This document shows positions 8,823 to 18,600 of a DNA stretch of 64,000 nt, piece by piece (within the stretch, counting starts at the first letter, position 1; the number at the start of each line of letters is the position of its first letter). The stretch comes from Styela clava (Eukaryota). The notes under the pieces are model-generated. The model worked only from the letters and a program-made list of their open reading frames with translations. It was not told the origin of the DNA and searched no databases. The stretch is taken from positions 14,198,001-14,262,000 of the forward strand of contig NC_135253.1 in assembly GCF_964204865.1 (NCBI RefSeq). Reading direction: 5' to 3'. The position numbers and the translations under genes were made by a program.

Positions 8823-11800
8823 TCACAAACATTCGCATGGATTTCCGCATTTATTTTTGTTTTCCCAGAAACGCTTCAAATCATAGGTTGTGTGTTGCGT
8901 TGACACCATCATGTTTGGAAAACAACTATCGTCACATAACCATTGATCGTTCTGAACATAGAAAAGACACATAATAATATAACACACATCCAAGATTACA
9001 GATTGTATTGTACACAGAATAGTATACCTCAAAATGACTCTTCTCAGAAACAACAGCGACCTAGTTTTCGAAAATATGTGGCAAGGATTCTGGGATATAA
9101 GCTATTCCAAATCACACCGTTTTCCCCCTAATCGAATGTATTATAAACGCCGTTCATCAAGGACACGCAGATATATCCGTTTATGGAAATTGAAACCGCT
9201 TGACAACCAGACCAGATGAGGCAAAAATACGAATTTAGTAAAGACATGCCGAGCTCTACGGGAGGGAATGTTGTCTATGATAACATTAGAAATGAAATTA
9301 ACATTTTTCTTAGAAACATTGACAACTACATTATATTCACCTCAACAACCAAGAAATCAAAACTGTTGACAGGAAAGTTCAAATTTTGGAGACAGCAAGA
9401 GCAGCCGAGTCATTTTTATTATTCTTACCTGAATATATTCAACATCTAGAGCAGACATCCATATTCCCATGGATACATCCTCTCCTTGATAAAATTTCAA
9501 GTTTCGACTGTTAATAGCCAAATACTTGGAAATATTCGACGAAATTATGTTGCCAGCACCACATGCATATGCAGGATAAACAGAGGCAGTATATTGATAT
9601 TCAGCCCATTTTCCCCATCTATCAACAATCCAATCCCTGCGAAAATTCCCCAACCATATTCCAAGTCCATAGCGTGGCTCCTCCTCTATTTGTTTAACAA
9701 GCTAAAAACATATTTTTCAATCATTACCCACATTTCAAGAACACGATAACCAAAAGGATAACTATGATGGCATTGTACAATATCGAATTTGGTTTGAGTC
9801 ATGCTCCTGATCAAGTACCCATTAAGCAAGTTTTCGGAACACCTATGATTTGAACTATCCGAATTCACGAATAGCAGATCTTTTTCAACATTGTATGAAA
9901 CGCTATCAATTAGAGTTAGACACTCGCACAGTGATTACTCATATATTCATTATTTTGAGTCATGTATGTTTGGAACTAACAACACACCTTATAAATCTTT
10001 CCAATATCAACATATGAATCATCGTCTGTTTTCATGATAAAATCAGCATTCAAACTTCTTGCCACATACTGATGAAAACTAATAAGTTTCCTTGGAACAT
10101 TCCTATAAGTCTCTATAATATCAGCACCATCAATATCAGGAACGATCAAAATATCATCATGTTCTTGAATCTCTTGCTTTATTTTTTTATCAGTTTCAAA
10201 TATGTGTTGCTGTTTTTCAGAATAAGCAGATTCTTCGTTTTGTACATACTTCCTCAATTGTGTAATATCTGAAATAAGATTGTAATAATACATACGGTAG
10301 ATCAAAATGCAAATAGGATATTTATTGAGAGTTGATAAACCGGTTTTTATTTGTGGTAAATCAAGGTCAATCGTCCAGAATGGGTATGGGAATAGTTATT
10401 TCACTTGTGTCCGAGTAGCATTATTATGAAGACGAAACTGGTCACATCACCATGCGGGGGCGAGGAGTTCAGCGATCCCCTCACAGATGAGTTGACCCAT
10501 GAATTAAACCTGTGAATCTCACTATTAAAAAATTTTTAGGTTTTGCAATCAAATGCTATTTAGTAATGAAAATCCGAACCCCAAATACAATCTGATTAAG
10601 TAGGTAGAAAGAAATTAAGTAATCTTCCTAGATGAGCAATAACTCACCTGCAAATTCTATTATTAAAGATGCAGGCAATATCATATTTTCAAGTGTCACA
10701 GGCAAGATATGAATTGGAAAATCTCCTTTCTTCAGTGAATAACAAATGATCTAAATATGTAAATTTGACATCTAATTTGAATAAAAATAATAAACTGATG
10801 GCTAAAATTGGTTCATAAGATTAGCAATACGCTAAAACATCATAAAGAGTTCCAATCATTGCAGGGTATCAAGAATAAACTTGAAATAGGTTATAGTTAA
10901 CTAAAATTAATGATTCTTCCATCAGCTTATTATTGAATTAAGGAGGACAATGAGTCAAAGATTAAAAACACAATTGAATGAAATTTCATATTCACTGGAG
11001 TGATATGATCAGATGCAAGTAGGAAATACAAGTACAGTATATAACACACTTTAAATTGCAACTAATATTGAATAAATGTTATCTTGATATGTTTCAATAT
11101 TTTAGAGTTATGGATCCATATTGAAATATGCAATTCAAAACTAGGTCTGCATGTTCACTCAAGGTAGTACAACTTACTTAATTATGGGCTGATATAAACA
11201 AACAGCAACAAGCCCATTGAGTTCTCATCAAATAACTTACAGGACTTATCTTTATAGCGGGATGAAACGAATGCCTTTGAAACCAACTCTTCACACCAAC
11301 ACATGATTTTTGCCTATCGCATACAACAACTAAAGATCCAAGAAATCCTTTCGGTAATAAATGAGGGTGGAAACCATATTTGTATATGTTAGATGTATTG
11401 TCACGATGTGGATCTCTTGCTTCAACAACAAGACTCTGTATATATAAAAATTGAGAGAACAAGTTATTGATATTGATTATATAGAACACAGAGAAACATG
11501 TAAAAAATACAGGCAAATAAAATAATGGTTTTCTCAGGTCAAATTTACCATTGTGCAAATAACCATGCAAAGGTATAAATAGAAATATACTTGAAAGTTC
11601 GTAAAAATATTTGTTTCAAATCAAAATTTGGAGCTCATGCTATCGAATGTCACTTGTCCTGATATTTAATATATTTGAAATCAATCTGTGATATGATAAG
11701 GCTTGAACCCAACCTGATTAAGTTATTTTTGTGGGTACAATATTTCCGCTGATTACATGATGCGATGATTAGGCTTATGTTATTCCAAAAAAGTTTTGGT

Positions 11801-14498
11801 TACTCATTTCAGTCAGATATTTTTGCTATTTAAAATTAGCATATGCCTATTGTTATAATATTCTTACATCCGCTGCCAGATTCCATAGTTGTACTATAAC
11901 ATTTTGTCCATTTGTTATAGGTATGGTGATACCAGATAGAATGACATCAAACGCCACTACAAAATCATAGCCCACTGCCACAAAATCCGCTGAATAACTC
12001 TCAACATTTTTGTTATCAACAAAAGCATGGTGGAGGATATCGATTGGACCTTTTTGTTCTGAAATGTAAGAATAAGTAGAAATGAACATAAGCAAGTCTC
12101 AACACGGTAATAACTTCCTACTCTGTAGCAAGTGCACATTACAGCATAAAGTTAAGAGAACAAATTTGACGCAGCTATATTTTTTCGTCAGTAGTCACTC
12201 AAGTTACCGTACACATTTTTAATGGTGTATTAGTATGCATGTATATTTTGTTCAATTTGCATCACACAATTTTGGCTTTTATGGATGGATGGACTACTAA
12301 CTATTTTCATTACATTGCTACACATTTGACTGATAAACAATGTGCTCACCTGGTAGACTTTTTCTTGCTTCTTCACAGGTATAAGCATCATTTCTGTATT
12401 CAACTGGAATATTACAATCCTGGTTTGCCAATATAAATTTCACAAATATGCTGTGTATAAAATAGTATAAAAATAATAAAATAACATACAGAAACAACTA
12501 CGAATGTTAGAAAACATCAAATCTAATGCGATAAATGGTCCATCTCAAATGGCATAACAAGAAGAAAGAAAGATTCTGGCCAAGCAATGTGTATGTCTAG
12601 TGAATCAAAACAGAACATTGCTTTCAAACATTGAATTTGTCCATGGTTGTAAGTACAAAATCGAAACGAAACTACACACAGATATTGTTGCTGTTACTGC
12701 ATATGAAAAGTTTGTAACTATACTCAGTGAAACTGTACTGGAACATATAACATGTGCAATAATATAGTAAAGATGCTTCGAACTCTGACCCCAAACAATT
12801 GCAGGGAGTAACAATAATTTACCACAATTAGCAAAAAGTAGTGCTTGACATATCTTCTTAGCATTGAATACAATTTGTTTAGATGTTGAAAAAAGTAAAA
12901 CTGATGGTAATTTTGGCATCAAAATAACAAGAAGTTTTTGAATAACATAACATAAGAATAACACAATGAATATAAATAAGCTTAGTTCAAGTCCTGATAC
13001 AGTAGTCATGACGTAAAGTTGTAGTTGAGTTGCTGCATGGAATACAACATCTTCAGAATTTGTACTGTTTCTATCATCAATGGTTGCGCTGGGTGCATTT
13101 TTTGATATCCACTTCATATAGCCATCACAAAACAAGCACAAAAAAGCCAATTTCCAGTGTTCATTACCAGTGTCTCGATTACACAATATGTGACGAATGG
13201 CTGCAAGTCGCAGAAGAATTAAATCCAAGAATACGAGAGTGATGTCAAATTCAATATATTTGTCAACAACTTGCTTGCACTTTGTACAATGTTCTATCTT
13301 AAGGATCCCAGTATTAGGGAATGTGGAATACAAATCTTTGCATTGTTCACCGCATTCAATACATGTGAACATATCAAATTAACTGTACAACCTAAAACAA
13401 CAAAATATGTATAAAATATATAACACTCACTCATTGAAAAGCTCTGTATTGCTGACAATGGAGAGCCAAGTTGAACGAATAGTATCTCGCTGAACAAAAT
13501 TTTCCCTGGCAGACAAGATTCCAATTGCCAATTTATACTTGTGCAATTTTGACCATTTCAATGCTGAAATTAGATATATTTTCATAAGCATTTCATCAAA
13601 ACACTTTTAATTATCAGGGTTGGCAACAAGTACACATCTGCAACTTCAGTTGCTGAATTACGCATATTCGAATCTTGTCTGCCAGCTGCTGATCTGGATG
13701 ATCATGTGCAACACAGCAGCAGAGCATTGCATCAGGCAGTCAGGGTTAGCTTCTCCCCACCCATTTACAGATTTATGCATTCAGGGAATTTTGACTGCCT
13801 CATATCTGCAGTATCTGATTGCTGGATTGAGGTATATGGTAAGTTTCGGTGCCTGTATTCAAGTATTTCAGTATTGACAAATTGTACACATGAATAACTT
13901 GTACTGTAGGCCTGTTTCAGTACTGTAGTTGGATAGAATTTTACATATATATTTCTGGCGGTGAGGAGAGCCGATTAGACGCCTTAATCATATGGCGAAC
14001 CACAGCCTCTCAGGGTCACATGTAGTTTCGTACCTAACATACTTCTAGTGGGCGTAGCATAACAATTTTTTCATGTGTCAATCCTAACCCCCAGTCCCCC
14101 ACCAGACTATACCATCCAAAAATTATGTCACTAGTGATGTAATAAAGCCCTTCAAACTATACGAACTGTCATCCAAGATGCGCAGTTGAGTACCCAAAAT
14201 CGAACAGCTATTTCTCTAGTTTTGTTGTCGCGATGATCCCAGCGGACAGCGGTTACGTAAACCACCCATAGTAATAAAGCCCTGTCTCACCTTTTGAGAC
14301 ATATCGGTACTTACATAATTATAACAGTTTAATATACACAGAAAATTTAATATGCATAACACCCTAGCAGGGTACCGGAATGCTGGTATGCTTTTTACCT
14401 ATATTTTTCTAGAAATTGGACTGACCTGGTCGTATGAAAATAGACAATATCGCAGTAGAAACGATGAAGACAAACAGAGCTGCATTTGAAGATCTCAT
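8823..14498 (-). CDS. B3GALNT2: UDP-GalNAc:beta-1,3-N-acetylgalactosaminyltransferase 2 (GT31), 9 coding exons: 14498-14426, 13563-13431, 12450-12350, 12058-11868, 11435-11241, 10750-10648, 10268-9988, 9701-9429, 8951-8823
   Basis: GT-AG junctions are phase-compatible. The N-terminal signal anchor MRSSNAALFVFIVSTAILSIF is followed by IGILSARENFVQRDTIRSTW, IFVKFILANQDCNIPVEYRNDAYTC, LLPKGFLG, KTDDD, YPAYACGAG, QGEDVSMGIW and C-terminal WLC...CGNPCEC, which follow the motif order of vertebrate B3GALNT2. Confidence 0.93.
12605..13372 (-). CDS. ARV1: Protein ARV1 (ER membrane protein; sterol/sphingolipid homeostasis and GPI-anchor biosynthesis), intronless, nested in B3GALNT2 intron 2
   Basis: Intact 255-aa ORF. 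It has an N-terminal Arv1 homology domain (CxxC...CxxC, DKYIEFD, DLIL...AIRHILCN), then LCDGYMKW and several hydrophobic segments. Confidence 0.93.
   Translation of the reverse strand: MFTCIECGEQCKDLYSTFPNTGILKIEHCTKCKQVVDKYIEFDITLVFLDLILLRLAAIRHILCNRDTGNEHWKLAFLCLFCDGYMKWISKNAPSATIDDRNSTNSEDVVFHAATQLQLYVMTTVSGLELSLFIFIVLFLCYVIQKLLVILMPKLPSVLLFSTSKQIVFNAKKICQALLFANCGKLLLLPAIVWGQSSKHLYYIIAHVICSSTVSLSIVTNFSYAVTATISVCSFVSILYLQPWTNSMFESNVLF
13931..14011 (-). mobile_element. 3' fragment of the tRNA-derived SINE family
   Basis: Reverse complement of the SINE tail at about 14900-14983 (gaggc..tggttcgccatatg..taag.cgtct.atcggct..cctc..atatgtaaa..ctatcc). Confidence 0.75.
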
Positions 14499-14640
14499 AA
14501 ATTTGTAAATATAAACTAGTCTGGCACTGCATGAATACCGGTACCGGTACCTGTGTGATACGGTAATAAGTTTACTTATGATGCGCTGATGCTGAGCCTG
14601 AGGTATATGGTCACTTTGCACTTTGCTGAGGTACGAATGC

Positions 14641-14983
14641 GGCGCGGCGGTGTGGCTCAACGGGCTAAGCGTTAGGAATACGCTCGCCACCGCACCTCTA
14701 ATTACTCTGCGTGGGTTCGCAGGTTCGAATCCCATGCAGGGATGGTTATGTGCGAGAGGATTGCTGGACTCCTCGCCGTCGTTGGGTGGTTCACGTAACC
14801 GCTGGTCGGTTACGGCTTCCTCCACCACCAAGTCCATGCTTCCGAAAAACAAACAACACAGTAAAAACTAATCCCATACCCGACTTGGAATGGTAACCGG
14901 ACGAGAGGCCGTGGTTCGCCATATGGATAAGCCGTCTTATCGGCTTTCCTCTCCCCCGGGATAAATATGTAAATCCTATCCTA
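14641..14983 (+). mobile_element. Apparently full-length tRNA-derived SINE (about 340 bp)
   Basis: Pol III A box TGGCTCAACGGG (14653) and B box GGTTCGAATCC (14722), followed by a non-tRNA body and an (atcct)n tail. Related copies or fragments lie at about 10450-10520, 13931-14011, 29956-30378, 53935-53990 and 61495-61740. Confidence 0.88.
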
Positions 14984-15542
14984 AAGTAAATTTAATTTAT
15001 GCACCAAACGGGTCAAAGGTTGAAAAATAGCTCGAAACTAGAGGGGCAGTTGATAGCTGGACCGAATTATACAATACCATATAAGCGTAAATATAGGTAT
15101 ACTACTACGATATAGGTATATTGAATCAGGTACCACCCAACAAAGATCTGGTGCAATTGTGTTCATGTGTAATCGTGTAGACGAAAAGTGATGTTTTATT
15201 GATAAATAAATAAAAACTGAAAAAAAAAGATCTGGATTATTTCCATATCCGACCTCGATTTGGTAGCCATGCAACAGATCGTGTTGCCTTTGTCATAGGT
15301 CTAAAACGCTTTTTCGATGTTCATTATGGAGAAACGCCAGTGTGGTATATTCTCATTGCTCGGCATAATCAGTACGCTGAATATCACACGCGCGTAACTC
15401 ATCTTGGCCAATATAGAAGGTGTCATACCACTCAAAGAAACAATTAGCAGGAGTTTTAGCTTCTCACGAATATACCGTTAGTCTGCCCGATATAAAAATG
15501 TACAACCTCTACTAAAGCGGGGTGCATCGCTACTGTTGGCCC

Positions 15543-15565
15543 ACTACACTACCCGCAGTCCCGCG
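15543..15565 (+). promoter_or_regulatory. Possible ZNF143/Staf-type motif in the divergent B3GALNT2-MLH3 promoter
   Basis: ACTACACTACCCGCAGTCCCGCG resembles the ACTACAnnTCCCAnnATGCnnCGCG consensus and lies 72 bp upstream of the MLH3 ATG. The match was made by eye only. Confidence 0.35.
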
Positions 15566-15636
15566 TGGCTGTAGAAATTACGAGGTTGGTGTCGTCACAA
15601 TGTGCTGGATACGTTTACAATAGACAGAATTTTGAA

Positions 15637-18600
15637 ATGGCTACTTTATCGACTTTGCTTTCTTCTGTTTCATCCGGCATCCGAAGTGGAATCGCCGCTC
15701 CAAATCTTGGGCAATGTATCGAAGAATTGGTGGTGAACAGCTTGGATGCCTATGCTACCGATATATCTGTGGAATATGATTCTGTTCGTCTTGATTTCAA
15801 AGTTACTGACAACGGTCATGGATTCTCTGAAGACAACTTGAGGAAAGCAGGTAGTAGCCTATAACGTTAAACCTGTTTGCTTTTTATTTTATTGACTTGA
15901 TCTCACGTTTGGTCAATTTAGTTCACGTTTCAGTTCGGAGCATGGAAACCATCCGTTTTGAATTCGAGGACATTAATTTTATGAATAATATTAATAATCA
16001 AAACATGAAGCCCCATTAAAACGTTCGAATTGAATGACTGGAGTATTAGTCTACGTATGTTTACAAGTTGACGTATTTTGCGATGAAAACTTAGTCGCGA
16101 ACCACCAATTATATAAACGAACTCCATGCTTTTGTGCTTTTTAAACCGTTCCCTTAAACGCTTAGTCTACCACGGACAGTCCCACTCCCATTTCTGACAA
16201 CTAACATTTGAAGTGATGCTGGCACAGTAACAACTGACATTGCTATACTGTAAATGCCTGGATTAAATCAACTACGTTAATGTAGTTGAATATATTTTGC
16301 AGGAATTCGTTATTCCACAAGCAAGTGCTCCACCAAAATCGATATTGATGAAAATCTACATTTCTACGGATTTCGAGGGGAGGCGCTCGCTAGTATAGCG
16401 TACCTTTCAAATATAGTGGAGATCACCAGTAGAGAGAGCGGCGCAAATAAAAAGTTTTACAAAATTGTTGAACAGGGGAAGAATCAAGAAATAAGAGTAT
16501 TGCCATGTGATATTGGCTATGCGAACGAAACTAGCGTTGCAGTGAAAGGACTTTATAAAGATTTGCCAGTCAGGAGGTAAACAGATTAGAGGAAGTATCC
16601 ACAGTAGCATTTTTAGGTATCTTTCATGAAGTAAGATTTTTATTTCGTCATCAATGCGCTCTTAACATCAAATTGTAGTTTTTTTGTTACGAAATGAAAA
16701 ATTTCGATAACAATAAATATTAATTTTGAATATTAAATATCATTTCTTTAGATATGGGCTGAATGTGGAGTTGGAATCAGAAGCTATCAGTGAGAGAATA
16801 AAAAGAATTTCAATAACACATCCTTCAACTTCTTTTGTGCTGATAAACACTTCAAAACCAGGATTCGATTTCCGAGTCCCAAAACACAAATCCTGTCTGT
16901 CAAGGTTAGTAATCCGTACCAGTCCTACATAGAAGAACTAAATACAGTTTGCCTGATTTTAATCTGTACGTTCTTATTTAGATTTCAGTTTGTGTTCGGC
17001 CATATACCACCTATTAATTTTATGAATGAAATTTCGTCTCACGAGCCGGAATACCAAATTTCGGGCGCGATTAGCCGGCATGGTTTTGATAATAAAAACC
17101 TACAGTTTGTCTTTGTAAACAGAAGACCTGTTTTAAAGGTAAAGAACATTTTACAAACAAATTAATTGCTGATTACAGATATCATTTTGCAAATGTTTCA
17201 TTTTTTCAGACTAGGATTCATAAGGAAATAAGTGAAATATTGAAAAAATCTGATATAGGCAATCGAAAAGAAGTATCTACGGAAGTACAGAGGAATAATA
17301 TACAAAAGATGAGGAATTCGGATTATCCTGTTAAAATTATTACCAAAAGAACATATGGGATTTATTTTATCAATATTATGTGAGCATATTCATTTATTTT
17401 CTAATTACGAAAATGAAAAAAAAAATTATTCAACACTTGATCGTCTGTTTGTGTACGATTGTACCCGAAAGATTCAGTAATAATCCAAGACGCTCTGCAC
17501 AAAGTTATGTTTCCTCTAGGTCTAGCTAGGATATGTTCTAAAATCTAAATGACTTGAGTTTTTATTTAGGTCACCCTAAAAATTGCGAATACATTTTCAC
17601 AAATATATTATATACTAAATATATTTTTGAAGGTGCTCCCACAGAAAATATGACATTTCGTTCGAGCCAGAGAAAACCATGATCGAATTTAAAAACTGGA
17701 ACCAAGTGCTTGCAGTCGCACTATCCACAATCATGCGATTTTTGAATGAAAATAATCTTTTACTTGCACCGCGAAAAGTAGATAAAGAAGAAGATTGCCA
17801 GAACAGAAAATTGGTAACAATATTATATATATATATGAAAATTCTGCTAATTTTACACCATCTTTTTTAAGTAATTAAGGTAAATTTTCCAGGATGGATC
17901 GTTGAAATTACCGACTGCCGGAGATATATTACCCCACGATGCCGCAGTTTTCAGCAAAATGGCTCAAAATAAGAATACAATCTCCTCTGCTTCTACCTCC
18001 AAGTTCTCTGTGGTTAATAGGAGTAGTAAGCTATCAGACATCAGCAATTCGATTTTTAGTGATCAAAAAAGCTCACATGCTATAGAGAACAAATTAGTCA
18101 GTTCCATTATCACGAACCCCGAAGGTGTGTCGATGAAGACATTGAAATCAAATTGGATTTCTAAATACAATGCGAAACTTGGAAGAAATGTTTACATAAA
18201 TGTTACAACGGGAATGTCGACAGAAAATGATCCCAAACTTACAGGTAAAACGCTAAAAATTTTAATACTTGTGTGAATTTTGATATTTGTTTACTATCGT
18301 TTTAATGCTTGCTGTCAATATCAGAAAATGCAGTATCTTGAGTTTTCATGATGTAAGGTGAAAATTAAATTTTTTATATGGAAAACAGCGAATTTATTGT
18401 ATTCTTCAACTATAATTCTGTGCGTAAAATATCATAATCAAAAATTTGCTTGTCAGATGCTCCAGAGATTACTTCCATTGGATTGGAATACGAGTTCAAA
18501 AATTGTGAACGGGAATTTGCACCCATTCCGAAGGAAGAACGCCCGAAGTTCGGTTGTCATTACAGGTAATAATTTATTTTGCTTAATTGTGTATATTTCA

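What the first reader, a model, noticed from the sequence alone, without database searches (positions are those of the whole stretch)
12451..13430. ARV1 fills a host intron on the same strand with no room for a promoter: a candidate operon inside an intron
Seen: B3GALNT2 intron 2 is 980 nt, and 768 nt of it is an intact, intronless ARV1 ORF on the same strand. The ARV1 ATG is 58 nt from the host exon 2 donor and follows a clean acceptor (ttttgttgttttag ending at 13392) by 19 nt. Known: nested genes are mostly antisense and in large introns. Ascidians use SL trans-splicing at unpaired acceptors near start codons to resolve polycistronic RNA. Both products are ER proteins tied to surface glycosylation (core M3 O-mannosyl glycan; GPI synthesis). 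Inference: one pre-mRNA yields either B3GALNT2 (cis-splicing discards ARV1) or ARV1 (SL addition or alternative acceptor use at 13391), making the two outputs compete per transcript.
Basis: partly seen in the sequence, partly recalled or inferred. Interest (0 to 1): 0.88.

Follow-up and report, generated by a model that had tools for sequence, protein, structure and literature searches.

The report
ARV1 gene inside a B3GALNT2 intron
In the sea squirt Styela clava the only copy of the lipid-handling gene ARV1 sits, without introns, inside a 980-base intron of the only B3GALNT2 gene on the same strand. It is expressed as its own RNA, whose two ends fall on two splice acceptor sites, which looks like a sea-squirt "operon" folded into an intron.

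Summary
RNA contigs from three of four runs (two studies) join host exon 2 (13431-13563, minus strand) to exon 3 (12350-12450). This defines a 980-nt intron (12451-13430) that holds an intact 255-aa Arv1 ORF (12605-13372). The host is the RefSeq B3GALNT2-like gene of Styela clava. Both genes are single copy.

ARV1 is expressed. In two runs its contig is separate from the host mRNA contig. In one run the contig ends at 13393 and 12452, which are the AG before the ARV1 start codon and the AG of exon 3's acceptor. Other runs hold contigs that run unspliced from exon 2 into ARV1, and from ARV1 into exons 3-5. They also hold a new junction from the exon 2 donor to a cryptic acceptor inside ARV1 (13202/13201), which gives a dead-end host transcript.

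The ARV1 3' UTR has no poly(A) signal and abuts an acceptor. ARV1 has a single exon. These are the published marks of upstream genes in Ciona operons.

The best reading is co-transcription with the host and release by spliced-leader trans-splicing at 13391. The scan noted this same stretch before (s1-806587), not on other DNA.

The parts
14426..14620 (-). B3GALNT2-like exon 1 (CDS from the ATG at 14498; the 5' limit is uncertain because it runs into a high-copy repeat)
   Evidence: Junction 14426/13563 in all four runs. tblastn of P0010 residues 1-25. ATG checked.
13431..13563 (-). B3GALNT2-like exon 2; ends in phase 2 and is followed by donor GTGAGT
12451..13430 (-). Host intron 2 (980 nt, GT..AG), which holds the whole ARV1 unit
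   Evidence: Joint 12450/13431 in X1, X2 and X5. Same junction in RefSeq protein P0010.
13392..13430 (-). 39-nt AT-rich stub between the exon 2 donor and the ARV1 acceptor (polypyrimidine run plus AG at 13393-13392). It carries a TATA-like run. No contig covers it in X1 or X2.
13373..13391 (-). ARV1 5' UTR, 19 nt from the acceptor cut to the ATG, with an in-frame TAA 9 nt before the ATG
   Evidence: ARV1 contigs end at 13383 (X1) and 13393 (X2).
12605..13372 (-). ARV1 coding sequence: one exon, 255 aa plus stop, zinc-ribbon cysteines C4, C7, C29 and C32 intact
   Evidence: Pfam Arv1 1.4e-32. 99% identical to XP_039249294. Alignment with five homologues of 53-58% identity. Covered end to end by RNA contigs in four runs.
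13201..13202 (-). AG of a cryptic acceptor inside the ARV1 ORF. The exon 2 donor is joined to 13200 in X5 and X7. The host frame then stops after 7 codons.
   Evidence: Joint 13200/13431, CT..AC on the + strand. Frame check.
12452..12604 (-). ARV1 3' UTR, without AATAAA, ATTAAA or any common variant. The isolated X2 contig ends at 12452.
12451..12489 (-). Second 39-nt GT..AG-shaped stub, which ends in the exon 3 acceptor. Contigs of X1, X5 and X7 read straight through it, and no contig was seen with it spliced out.
12350..12450 (-). B3GALNT2-like exon 3
8826..12058 (-). Remaining host exons: 11868-12058, 11241-11435, 10649-10750, about 9985-10272, 9429-9701, and 8826-8960 (stop)
   Evidence: Joints for the first two. 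tblastn of P0010. Pfam Galactosyl_T on two exons searched separately.

Best explanation
ARV1 is a working single-exon gene that has no transcription unit of its own. RNA polymerase starts at the B3GALNT2 promoter and copies exons 1 and 2, then ARV1, then exon 3 onward.

The exon 2 donor lies only 39 nt before the strong acceptor at 13393/13392. That is probably too close for the two to be spliced to each other, so the acceptor is left free for the ascidian spliced leader. Adding the leader at 13391 gives ARV1 a capped 5' end 19 nt before its ATG.

The ARV1 RNA ends at or within a few bases of the AG of the exon 3 acceptor (about 12452), without a poly(A) signal. This is how upstream genes end in Ciona operons that lack intercistronic DNA. 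If instead the exon 2 donor is spliced to exon 3, ARV1 is thrown away with the intron and B3GALNT2 mRNA results. A third outcome, seen in some samples, joins exon 2 to a cryptic acceptor inside ARV1 and yields a dead-end host RNA.

Shown: the nesting, single-copy status, expression, a separate ARV1 RNA whose contig ends fall at the two acceptors, the shared precursor, the cryptic junction, and the lack of a poly(A) signal. Inferred: the leader itself, the poly(A) site to the base, and the either/or choice per transcript.
For: - **Separate ARV1 RNA.** The ARV1 contigs are 963 nt in X1 (12421-13383) and 942 nt in X2 (12452-13393). In X2 the contig is joined to nothing, and the host contig runs unbroken from exon 5 to exon 1. 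ARV1 RNA is therefore a separate molecule that is not cis-spliced to host exons.
- **Ends on the acceptors.** The two ends of the X2 contig sit on the AG at 13393/13392 and on the A of the AG at 12452/12451. That is where a leader and a poly(A) tail would make the RNA depart from the genome. Arithmetic on the depth table shows no other contig on 13394-13430 in X1 or X2.
- **Shared precursor.** A contig spans 13171-13460 in X5 and X7. A contig in X7 spans 13200-12350 and is spliced on to exons 4 and 5. The ARV1 contigs of X1 and X5 reach 27-30 nt into exon 3.
- **These are RNA runs.** The other host introns have about 0-2 depth, and all joints are GT..AG.
- **No poly(A) signal** of any usual kind in the 154 nt after the stop codon.
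- **Ciona precedent.** In Ciona operons the two genes abut directly, poly(A) is added at the G of the downstream AG or 2-6 nt before it, and 16 of 18 lack AATAAA. The authors proposed mutually exclusive output (PMC1488885). 60% of first genes in Ciona operons have a single exon (PMC2760879).
- **Both genes are needed.** Each is single copy, so selection must keep both outputs.
Against: - No spliced-leader letters were seen on any ARV1 contig.
- The S. clava leader gene was not found. Matches to the Ciona leader turned out to be a tRNA gene array and repeat families.
- Contigs cannot show true RNA ends, caps or tails. The exact-end argument rests on one contig in one run.
- The stub holds a TATA-like run about 30 nt before 13392, so an ordinary start site there would give the same contig end.
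- The bridging contigs in X5 and X7 could come from a little ordinary pre-mRNA, because those runs show faint cover of other introns.
- Within-species variation in the ORF is 6 replacement to 3 silent changes, which by itself is only weak evidence of constraint.
Confidence: 0.6

Rival explanations
1. ARV1 has its own small promoter. Transcription starts at about 13393-13385, driven by the TATA-like run in the 39-nt stub and by sequence in host exon 2. The nearby acceptor is a coincidence. The two genes overlap but are transcribed independently.
For: A TATATAT run lies at 13422-13416, about 30 nt before the contig ends at 13393 and 13383. ARV1 contigs are deeper than the host contigs in X1 and X2, and unlinked to them in X2. 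No leader was seen.
Against: The stub is 80% A+T, so a TATA-like run is expected by chance. It is unlikely that a contig reaches the very first base of an unextended transcript and stops on the AG, and that the other end also stops on an AG. A strong polypyrimidine-AG 19 nt before an ATG is the usual layout of trans-spliced ascidian genes. The RNA also lacks an ordinary 3' end signal, which fits operon-type processing.
Confidence: 0.2
2. ARV1 mRNA is made from the excised intron. Normal exon 2-exon 3 splicing frees the intron, whose 3' end is by definition the AG at 12451. The leader is then added at 13391 and the free 3' end is polyadenylated. One pre-mRNA would then give both mRNAs, so the two outputs are coupled and do not compete.
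For: The ARV1 contig in X2 ends one base from the intron's last base, and there is no poly(A) signal that could direct an ordinary cleavage. Satou et al. raised the idea that splicing chemistry itself makes upstream 3' ends in Ciona operons (PMC1488885).
Against: In X1 the ARV1 contig continues into exon 3 while nothing links it to exon 2. Some molecules have therefore already lost exons 1-2 but still carry exon 3, the opposite order of events. No case of trans-splicing on a lariat is known to me. The evidence comes from contigs only.
Confidence: 0.1
3. There is no separate ARV1 mRNA of importance. ARV1 is translated from host transcripts that keep intron 2, or that use the cryptic acceptor, by re-initiation after the short truncated host ORF.
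For: Contigs in X5 and X7 run from exon 2 through the stub into ARV1. In X7 a contig runs from ARV1 into exons 3-5, and no normal exon 2-exon 3 joint was found in X7.
Against: In X1 and X2 the ARV1 contigs are not linked to exon 2 and nothing covers the stub. In an intron-retaining RNA the ARV1 ATG follows a 70-codon host ORF that stops 55 nt upstream, which is poor for re-initiation. The cryptic junction removes the first 57 ARV1 codons.
Confidence: 0.05
4. ARV1 here is a silent or decaying retrocopy.
For: It is intronless and lies inside another gene's intron, and 6 of 9 variants in the ORF change the protein.
Against: It is the only ARV1 match in the 377-Mb assembly. The ORF is intact with all invariant family residues. 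RNA contigs cover it fully in four runs from three studies. No poly(A) tract or target-site duplication flanks it.
Confidence: 0.02

Closest known systems
Ciona-type SL-resolved operons without intercistronic DNA (Satou et al. 2006, PMC1488885; Satou et al. 2008, PMC2760879)
   Same: A same-strand single-exon gene whose RNA ends at the AG acceptor of what follows. No AATAAA. An acceptor a few bases before the start codon. An unresolved precursor is detectable. The expected output is either/or per transcript. The organism is an ascidian.
   Different: In Ciona the units are whole genes laid end to end. Here the 'upstream unit' is only the first two coding exons of the host and the 'downstream unit' is the rest of the same host gene, so the operon member lies inside an intron and ordinary cis-splicing skips over it. 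Leader addition was not shown here.
SL1-type operons of Caenorhabditis elegans (no intercistronic sequence; cited in PMC1488885)
   Same: The poly(A) site of one gene and the trans-splice site of the next coincide, so the two products are thought to be mutually exclusive per transcript.
   Different: The phylum and the leader differ. The characterised nematode cases keep AATAAA, and they are not nested in an intron.
Ordinary intron-nested genes of animals
   Same: A complete gene lies inside another gene's intron.
   Different: By general knowledge such genes are mostly on the opposite strand, in long introns, with their own promoter and poly(A) signal. Here the gene is on the same strand, fills 96% of the intron counted from its acceptor to the intron's end, and has neither room for a promoter nor a poly(A) signal.
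Retrogenes that replaced their parent gene
   Same: ARV1 is intronless and single copy. An unidentified marine eukaryote contig (L021) has at least two introns in the same coding region.
   Different: No poly(A) remnant, no target-site duplication and no parent copy were found. A related protein (P0009, in the 90% cluster of P0006, which is 53% identical to this ARV1) is also called as one ORF on a 15-kb contig. The intronless state may therefore be old.

Membership tests
Arv1 family (Pfam PF04161) | Match to the family profile over its full length, above the curated cut-off | tested here: met
   114.1 bits against a cut-off of 20, E 1.4e-32, profile positions 2-197 of 202.
Arv1 family (Pfam PF04161) | N-terminal Arv1 homology domain with two CxxC pairs | tested here: met
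   C4, C7, C29 and C32 are invariant in the alignment of seven sequences.
B3GALNT2 (GT31 glycosyltransferase) | Galactosyl_T domain with closest named relatives B3GALNT2, not other GT31 members | tested here: met
   An exon searched alone finds RefSeq XP_039249293 'B3GALNT2-like' at 100% identity. The next named hits (scallops, an oyster, a clam) all carry that name at 52-60% identity. Pfam Galactosyl_T 1.9e-22. Other GT31 loci in the genome are only 29-31% identical. Enzyme activity was not tested.
Intron-nested gene, same strand | Host intron borders proven by RNA, with the guest ORF wholly inside on the same strand | tested here: met
   Joint 12450/13431 in three runs; ORF at 12605-13372.
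Ciona-type SL-resolved operon | Same-strand units directly abutted: the upstream RNA's 3' end lies at the acceptor AG of the next unit | tested here: inconclusive
   The isolated ARV1 contig in X2 ends at 12452, the A of the exon 3 acceptor AG. In X1 the exon 3-5 contig is no deeper than the exon 1-2 contig, so little ARV1 RNA runs on. Contigs cannot show the poly(A) junction itself.
Ciona-type SL-resolved operon | The downstream unit receives the spliced leader at its acceptor | not testable with these tools
   Only contigs were laid. No leader letters were seen, and the loose-end table was filled by a repeat. The S. clava leader gene was not identified.
Ciona-type SL-resolved operon | An unresolved polycistronic precursor exists | tested here: met
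   Contig 13171-13460 in X5 and X7. X7 contig from 13200 through exon 3, spliced to exons 4 and 5. X1 and X5 contigs reach into exon 3.
Ciona-type SL-resolved operon | The upstream gene usually lacks AATAAA and often has a single exon | tested here: met
   No AATAAA, ATTAAA or any of 12 variants in the 3' UTR. Single-exon ORF. The published frequencies are 16/18 and 60%.
Processed retrogene | Poly(A) remnant, target-site duplication, and a parent copy elsewhere | tested here: not met
   No A-run at the 3' end. The two 39-nt flanks are no more alike than shuffles (score 7 against a mean of 6.8, p 0.53). There is no second ARV1 locus. Only the lack of introns fits.

The most novel reading that the evidence does not exclude
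The ARV1 mRNA is cut out of the host pre-mRNA purely by splice-site chemistry. Its 5' end is made by leader addition at an acceptor that lies too close to the host donor to be used in cis. Its 3' end is made by cleavage at the host's own exon 3 acceptor and then polyadenylated without any poly(A) signal. An intron would then be a protein-coding mRNA in its own right, and one pre-mRNA could yield both an ER glycosyltransferase mRNA and an ER lipid/GPI factor mRNA.
Probability: 0.12. Interest if true: 0.85.

Novelty: new variant of a known kind. Interest (0 to 1): 0.52.

Why it matters
How upstream genes in ascidian operons get their 3' ends without a poly(A) signal, exactly at the next acceptor, has been open since 2006. 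So has the question of whether the two outputs of such a boundary exclude each other.

This locus puts that boundary inside a gene whose own cis-splicing uses the same acceptor. Three outcomes can therefore be read from one short stretch: B3GALNT2 mRNA, ARV1 mRNA, and a dead-end hybrid. The 39-nt spacing between donor and acceptor offers a natural test of the rule that decides between cis- and trans-splicing. Both genes are single copy and presumably needed, so the balance must be regulated.

It also warns annotators that intron retention and odd junctions at such loci may be real products of a nested cistron.

Tried and rejected
- **Spliced-leader gene of S. clava.** I searched with the Ciona leader plus GT. 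There was no exact match. The two 1-mismatch hits (L002, L003) are single loci without convincing SL RNA features. A 60-copy array of a 2-mismatch match on C3 is a tandem tRNA gene cluster (L004). Other recurring matches are dispersed repeat families or duplicated genes (L005-L020). An earlier scan note says Tx1-type elements sit in the leader genes of this genome. That might hide the exon-GT pattern, but I did not test it.
- **The look-up of encoding contigs was closed.** I could not fetch the transcript or genome contigs behind the five ARV1 homologues, so neither leader-bearing contigs nor nesting in other species could be checked.
- **Metagenome scan with the ARV1 alignment.** It gave one contig of an unidentified marine eukaryote, with an intron-containing ARV1 and no B3GALNT2 exons within 4 kb. 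This is uninformative on nesting.
- **Twin 39-nt stubs as a duplication.** Rejected, because they are no more alike than shuffled sequences.
- **The stubs as real mini-introns.** No 39-nt skip appears among the listed joints, and contigs read through both stubs. However, 33 joints were not shown.
- **Rfam on 11000-16000:** nothing. **ARAGORN on the repeat:** nothing.
- **Literature.** No paper links ARV1 with B3GALNT2 structurally, and none covers trans-splicing in Styela. The Matsumoto 2010 paper on Ciona trans-spliced mRNAs is not held.
- **Joined host model.** I did not build one. Exons were searched one by one by reference, and the public protein found that way was used to place the exons.
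Full report
**What is there**

The window is from the ascidian Styela clava. The 255-aa ORF at 12605-13372 (minus strand) is 99% identical to RefSeq 'protein ARV1-like [Styela clava]' XP_039249294. It matches Pfam Arv1 at E 1.4e-32 over nearly the whole profile. It keeps the four zinc-ribbon cysteines and all other columns that are invariant among five homologues of 53-58% identity. It is the only ARV1 match in the 377-Mb assembly.

I searched the surrounding minus-strand exons one at a time by reference.
- Two of them match Pfam Galactosyl_T.
- One exon, searched against 1.8 billion representatives, finds RefSeq XP_039249293 'UDP-GalNAc:beta-1,3-N-acetylgalactosaminyltransferase 2-like [Styela clava]' at 100% identity. 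The next named hits are B3GALNT2-like proteins of molluscs.

Laying that public protein on the window gives nine coding exons from 14498 down to 8826. This gene is also single copy, and the other GT31 loci are only 29-31% identical. I built no joined exon model of my own.

**RNA evidence**

Four runs from three studies were laid as Logan contigs. They are RNA: every host intron appears as a GT..AG skip, and the other introns have about 0-2 depth.

The exon 2-exon 3 joint (12450/13431, skipping exactly 980 nt) is present in X1, X2 and X5. The distances of 58 nt (donor to ATG) and 19 nt (acceptor to ATG) also hold.

ARV1 is covered end to end in all four runs.
- **X2.** The ARV1 contig is 942 nt (12452-13393) and is joined to nothing. 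The host contig runs unbroken from exon 5 to exon 1, so no alternative junction leaves either host donor in that run.
- **X1.** The ARV1 contig spans 12421-13383. It reaches 30 nt (k-1) into exon 3 but has no link to exon 2.
- **The stub.** The contigs listed reproduce the depth table to the second digit for X1, X2 and X7. For example, for X1 (19x30.1 + 131x12.2)/197 = 11.0. Nothing else therefore lies on 13394-13430 in X1 or X2.

Most ARV1 RNA is thus a separate molecule that begins at or just after the acceptor AG (13393/13392). This excludes a start site in exon 2 or intron 1. For X2 it also excludes cis-splicing from host exons.

**The ends of the X2 contig**

The two ends of the isolated X2 contig fall on the AG before the ARV1 ATG and on the A of the AG that ends the intron. 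In a de Bruijn assembly a contig stops exactly where sequences begin to differ. That is what would happen if mature RNAs carry a leader (the Ciona leader ends in AG) and a poly(A) tail at these two points, while a few precursor reads carry the genomic continuation. This is my inference from one contig, not an observation of a leader or a tail.

**Shared precursor and a new junction**

In X5 and X7 a 290-nt contig (13171-13460) runs unspliced from exon 2 through the 39-nt stub into the ARV1 ORF. In X7 one contig runs from 13200 through the end of the intron into exon 3 and is then spliced to exons 4 and 5. ARV1 sequence is therefore physically continuous with host exons on both sides in RNA. 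This could be a small amount of precursor, since X5 and X7 also show faint cover of other introns.

X5 and X7 also hold a joint from the exon 2 donor to 13200, behind a CTTGCAG acceptor inside the ARV1 ORF. The host frame then reads seven codons and stops, so this is a dead-end isoform. No normal exon 2-exon 3 joint was found in X7, but the tool warns that a hole proves nothing. It shows directly that acceptors brought in by ARV1 compete for the host donor.

**The 3' end**

The 154 nt after the ARV1 stop codon hold no AATAAA, no ATTAAA and none of twelve common variants. In X1 the exon 3-5 contig (12.5) is no deeper than the exon 1-2 contig (12.2), while ARV1 is at 30. Few ARV1 RNAs therefore run on into exon 3. 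This carries the tool's caveat that contig depth is a crude measure. The RNA must end within the last bases of the intron.

**Comparison with what is known**

Satou et al. (PMC1488885) showed the following for Ciona operons.
- The genes abut without intercistronic DNA.
- Poly(A) is added to the G of the downstream acceptor's AG, or 2-6 nt before it.
- 16 of 18 upstream genes lack AATAAA.
- The authors argued that a given transcript can yield either the upstream or the downstream mRNA, not both.

The 2008 gene-model paper (PMC2760879) found that about a fifth of Ciona genes are in operons and that 60% of first genes have a single exon.

ARV1 has each of these marks at its 3' border with host exon 3. 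At its 5' border it has the layout of a trans-spliced gene: polypyrimidine-AG, a 19-nt UTR, then the ATG. What differs is the topology. The units on either side of ARV1 are two parts of one gene, which are normally joined by cis-splicing across it. I found no paper that describes this for ARV1/B3GALNT2, and none on trans-splicing in Styela. RefSeq already lists the two genes separately, with consecutive accession numbers.

**What is not shown**

The leader was not seen, and I could not find the S. clava leader gene.

An ordinary start site at about 13393, behind the TATA-like run of the stub, stays possible (about 0.2). However, that run is expected by chance in sequence that is 80% A+T.

The two 39-nt GT..AG-shaped stubs noted by another first-stage reader are no more alike than shuffles, and no contig was seen with either one spliced out.

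The ORF carries 6 replacement and 3 silent variants among the runs. That is weak constraint on its own. The intact ORF, its expression and its single-copy status argue for function.

**Origin**

An unidentified marine eukaryote contig has at least two introns in the same part of ARV1, so the intronless state here is derived. No retroposition scars were found. A related protein (P0009, in the 90% cluster of P0006, itself 53% identical to this ARV1) is called as one ORF on a 15-kb contig, which suggests that the intronless form is old.

**Verdict**

The locus is best read as a Ciona-type operon boundary folded into an intron (confidence about 0.6). Leader addition, the exact poly(A) site and the per-transcript competition still need to be shown with raw reads or RACE. 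This is a new variant of a known kind and is of moderate interest.

Noticed in passing
window 14641-14983 (also 13956-14350): A high-copy repeat overlaps the 5' end and promoter side of B3GALNT2 exon 1. RNA contig depth there is 10^4 to 10^5 summed over many contigs, with many rearranged joints. Its sequence looks tRNA-derived (SINE-like) by eye, but ARAGORN and Rfam find nothing.
   Followed up: partly
window 15423-16900, + strand: A divergent neighbour gene starts about 800 nt from B3GALNT2 exon 1. Its ATG is at 15637, its first exon matches Pfam HATPase_c_3 (a MutL/MLH-type N-terminus by eye), and it has GT..AG introns at 15847-16298 and 16575-16749 in run X7 only. The two genes probably share a bidirectional promoter region.
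   Followed up: partly
window 13002, 12850, 12784: The window's ARV1 differs from RefSeq XP_039249294 at T124I, C175S and S197R. All four RNA runs carry the Ile allele at codon 124, so the reference assembly has the minor or private allele.
   Followed up: yes
window 14536: A 6-nt deletion relative to the window, in the 5' UTR part of host exon 1, is present in three of four RNA runs. This is a polymorphism.
   Followed up: no
window 13404-13418 and 12462-12475: Both 39-nt stubs contain TTTTATAC(A)TATTTT about 14-25 nt before their AG. This may be a branch-site region or just chance in AT-rich sequence. Overall the stubs are no more alike than shuffles.
   Followed up: partly
L004 (G000:C3:24861500-24864200), array C3:24.85-24.92 Mb: A long tandem array of tRNA genes (two kinds per unit, periods of about 630-1830 nt) carries a 16-mer upstream of one tRNA that differs from the Ciona spliced leader by one base. 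It is not an SL RNA gene.
   Followed up: partly
L005-L011 (seven loci on C1, C5, C6, C9): A dispersed repeat family contains ATTCTATTGGAAAAAG followed by GT. Similarity extends over 100 nt on both sides, so this is a transposable element and not a leader gene.
   Followed up: partly
L021 (marine metagenome contig OREC01024795): An ARV1 gene of an unidentified marine eukaryote, with introns after about codon 29 and about codon 66. No B3GALNT2 exons lie within 4 kb.
   Followed up: partly
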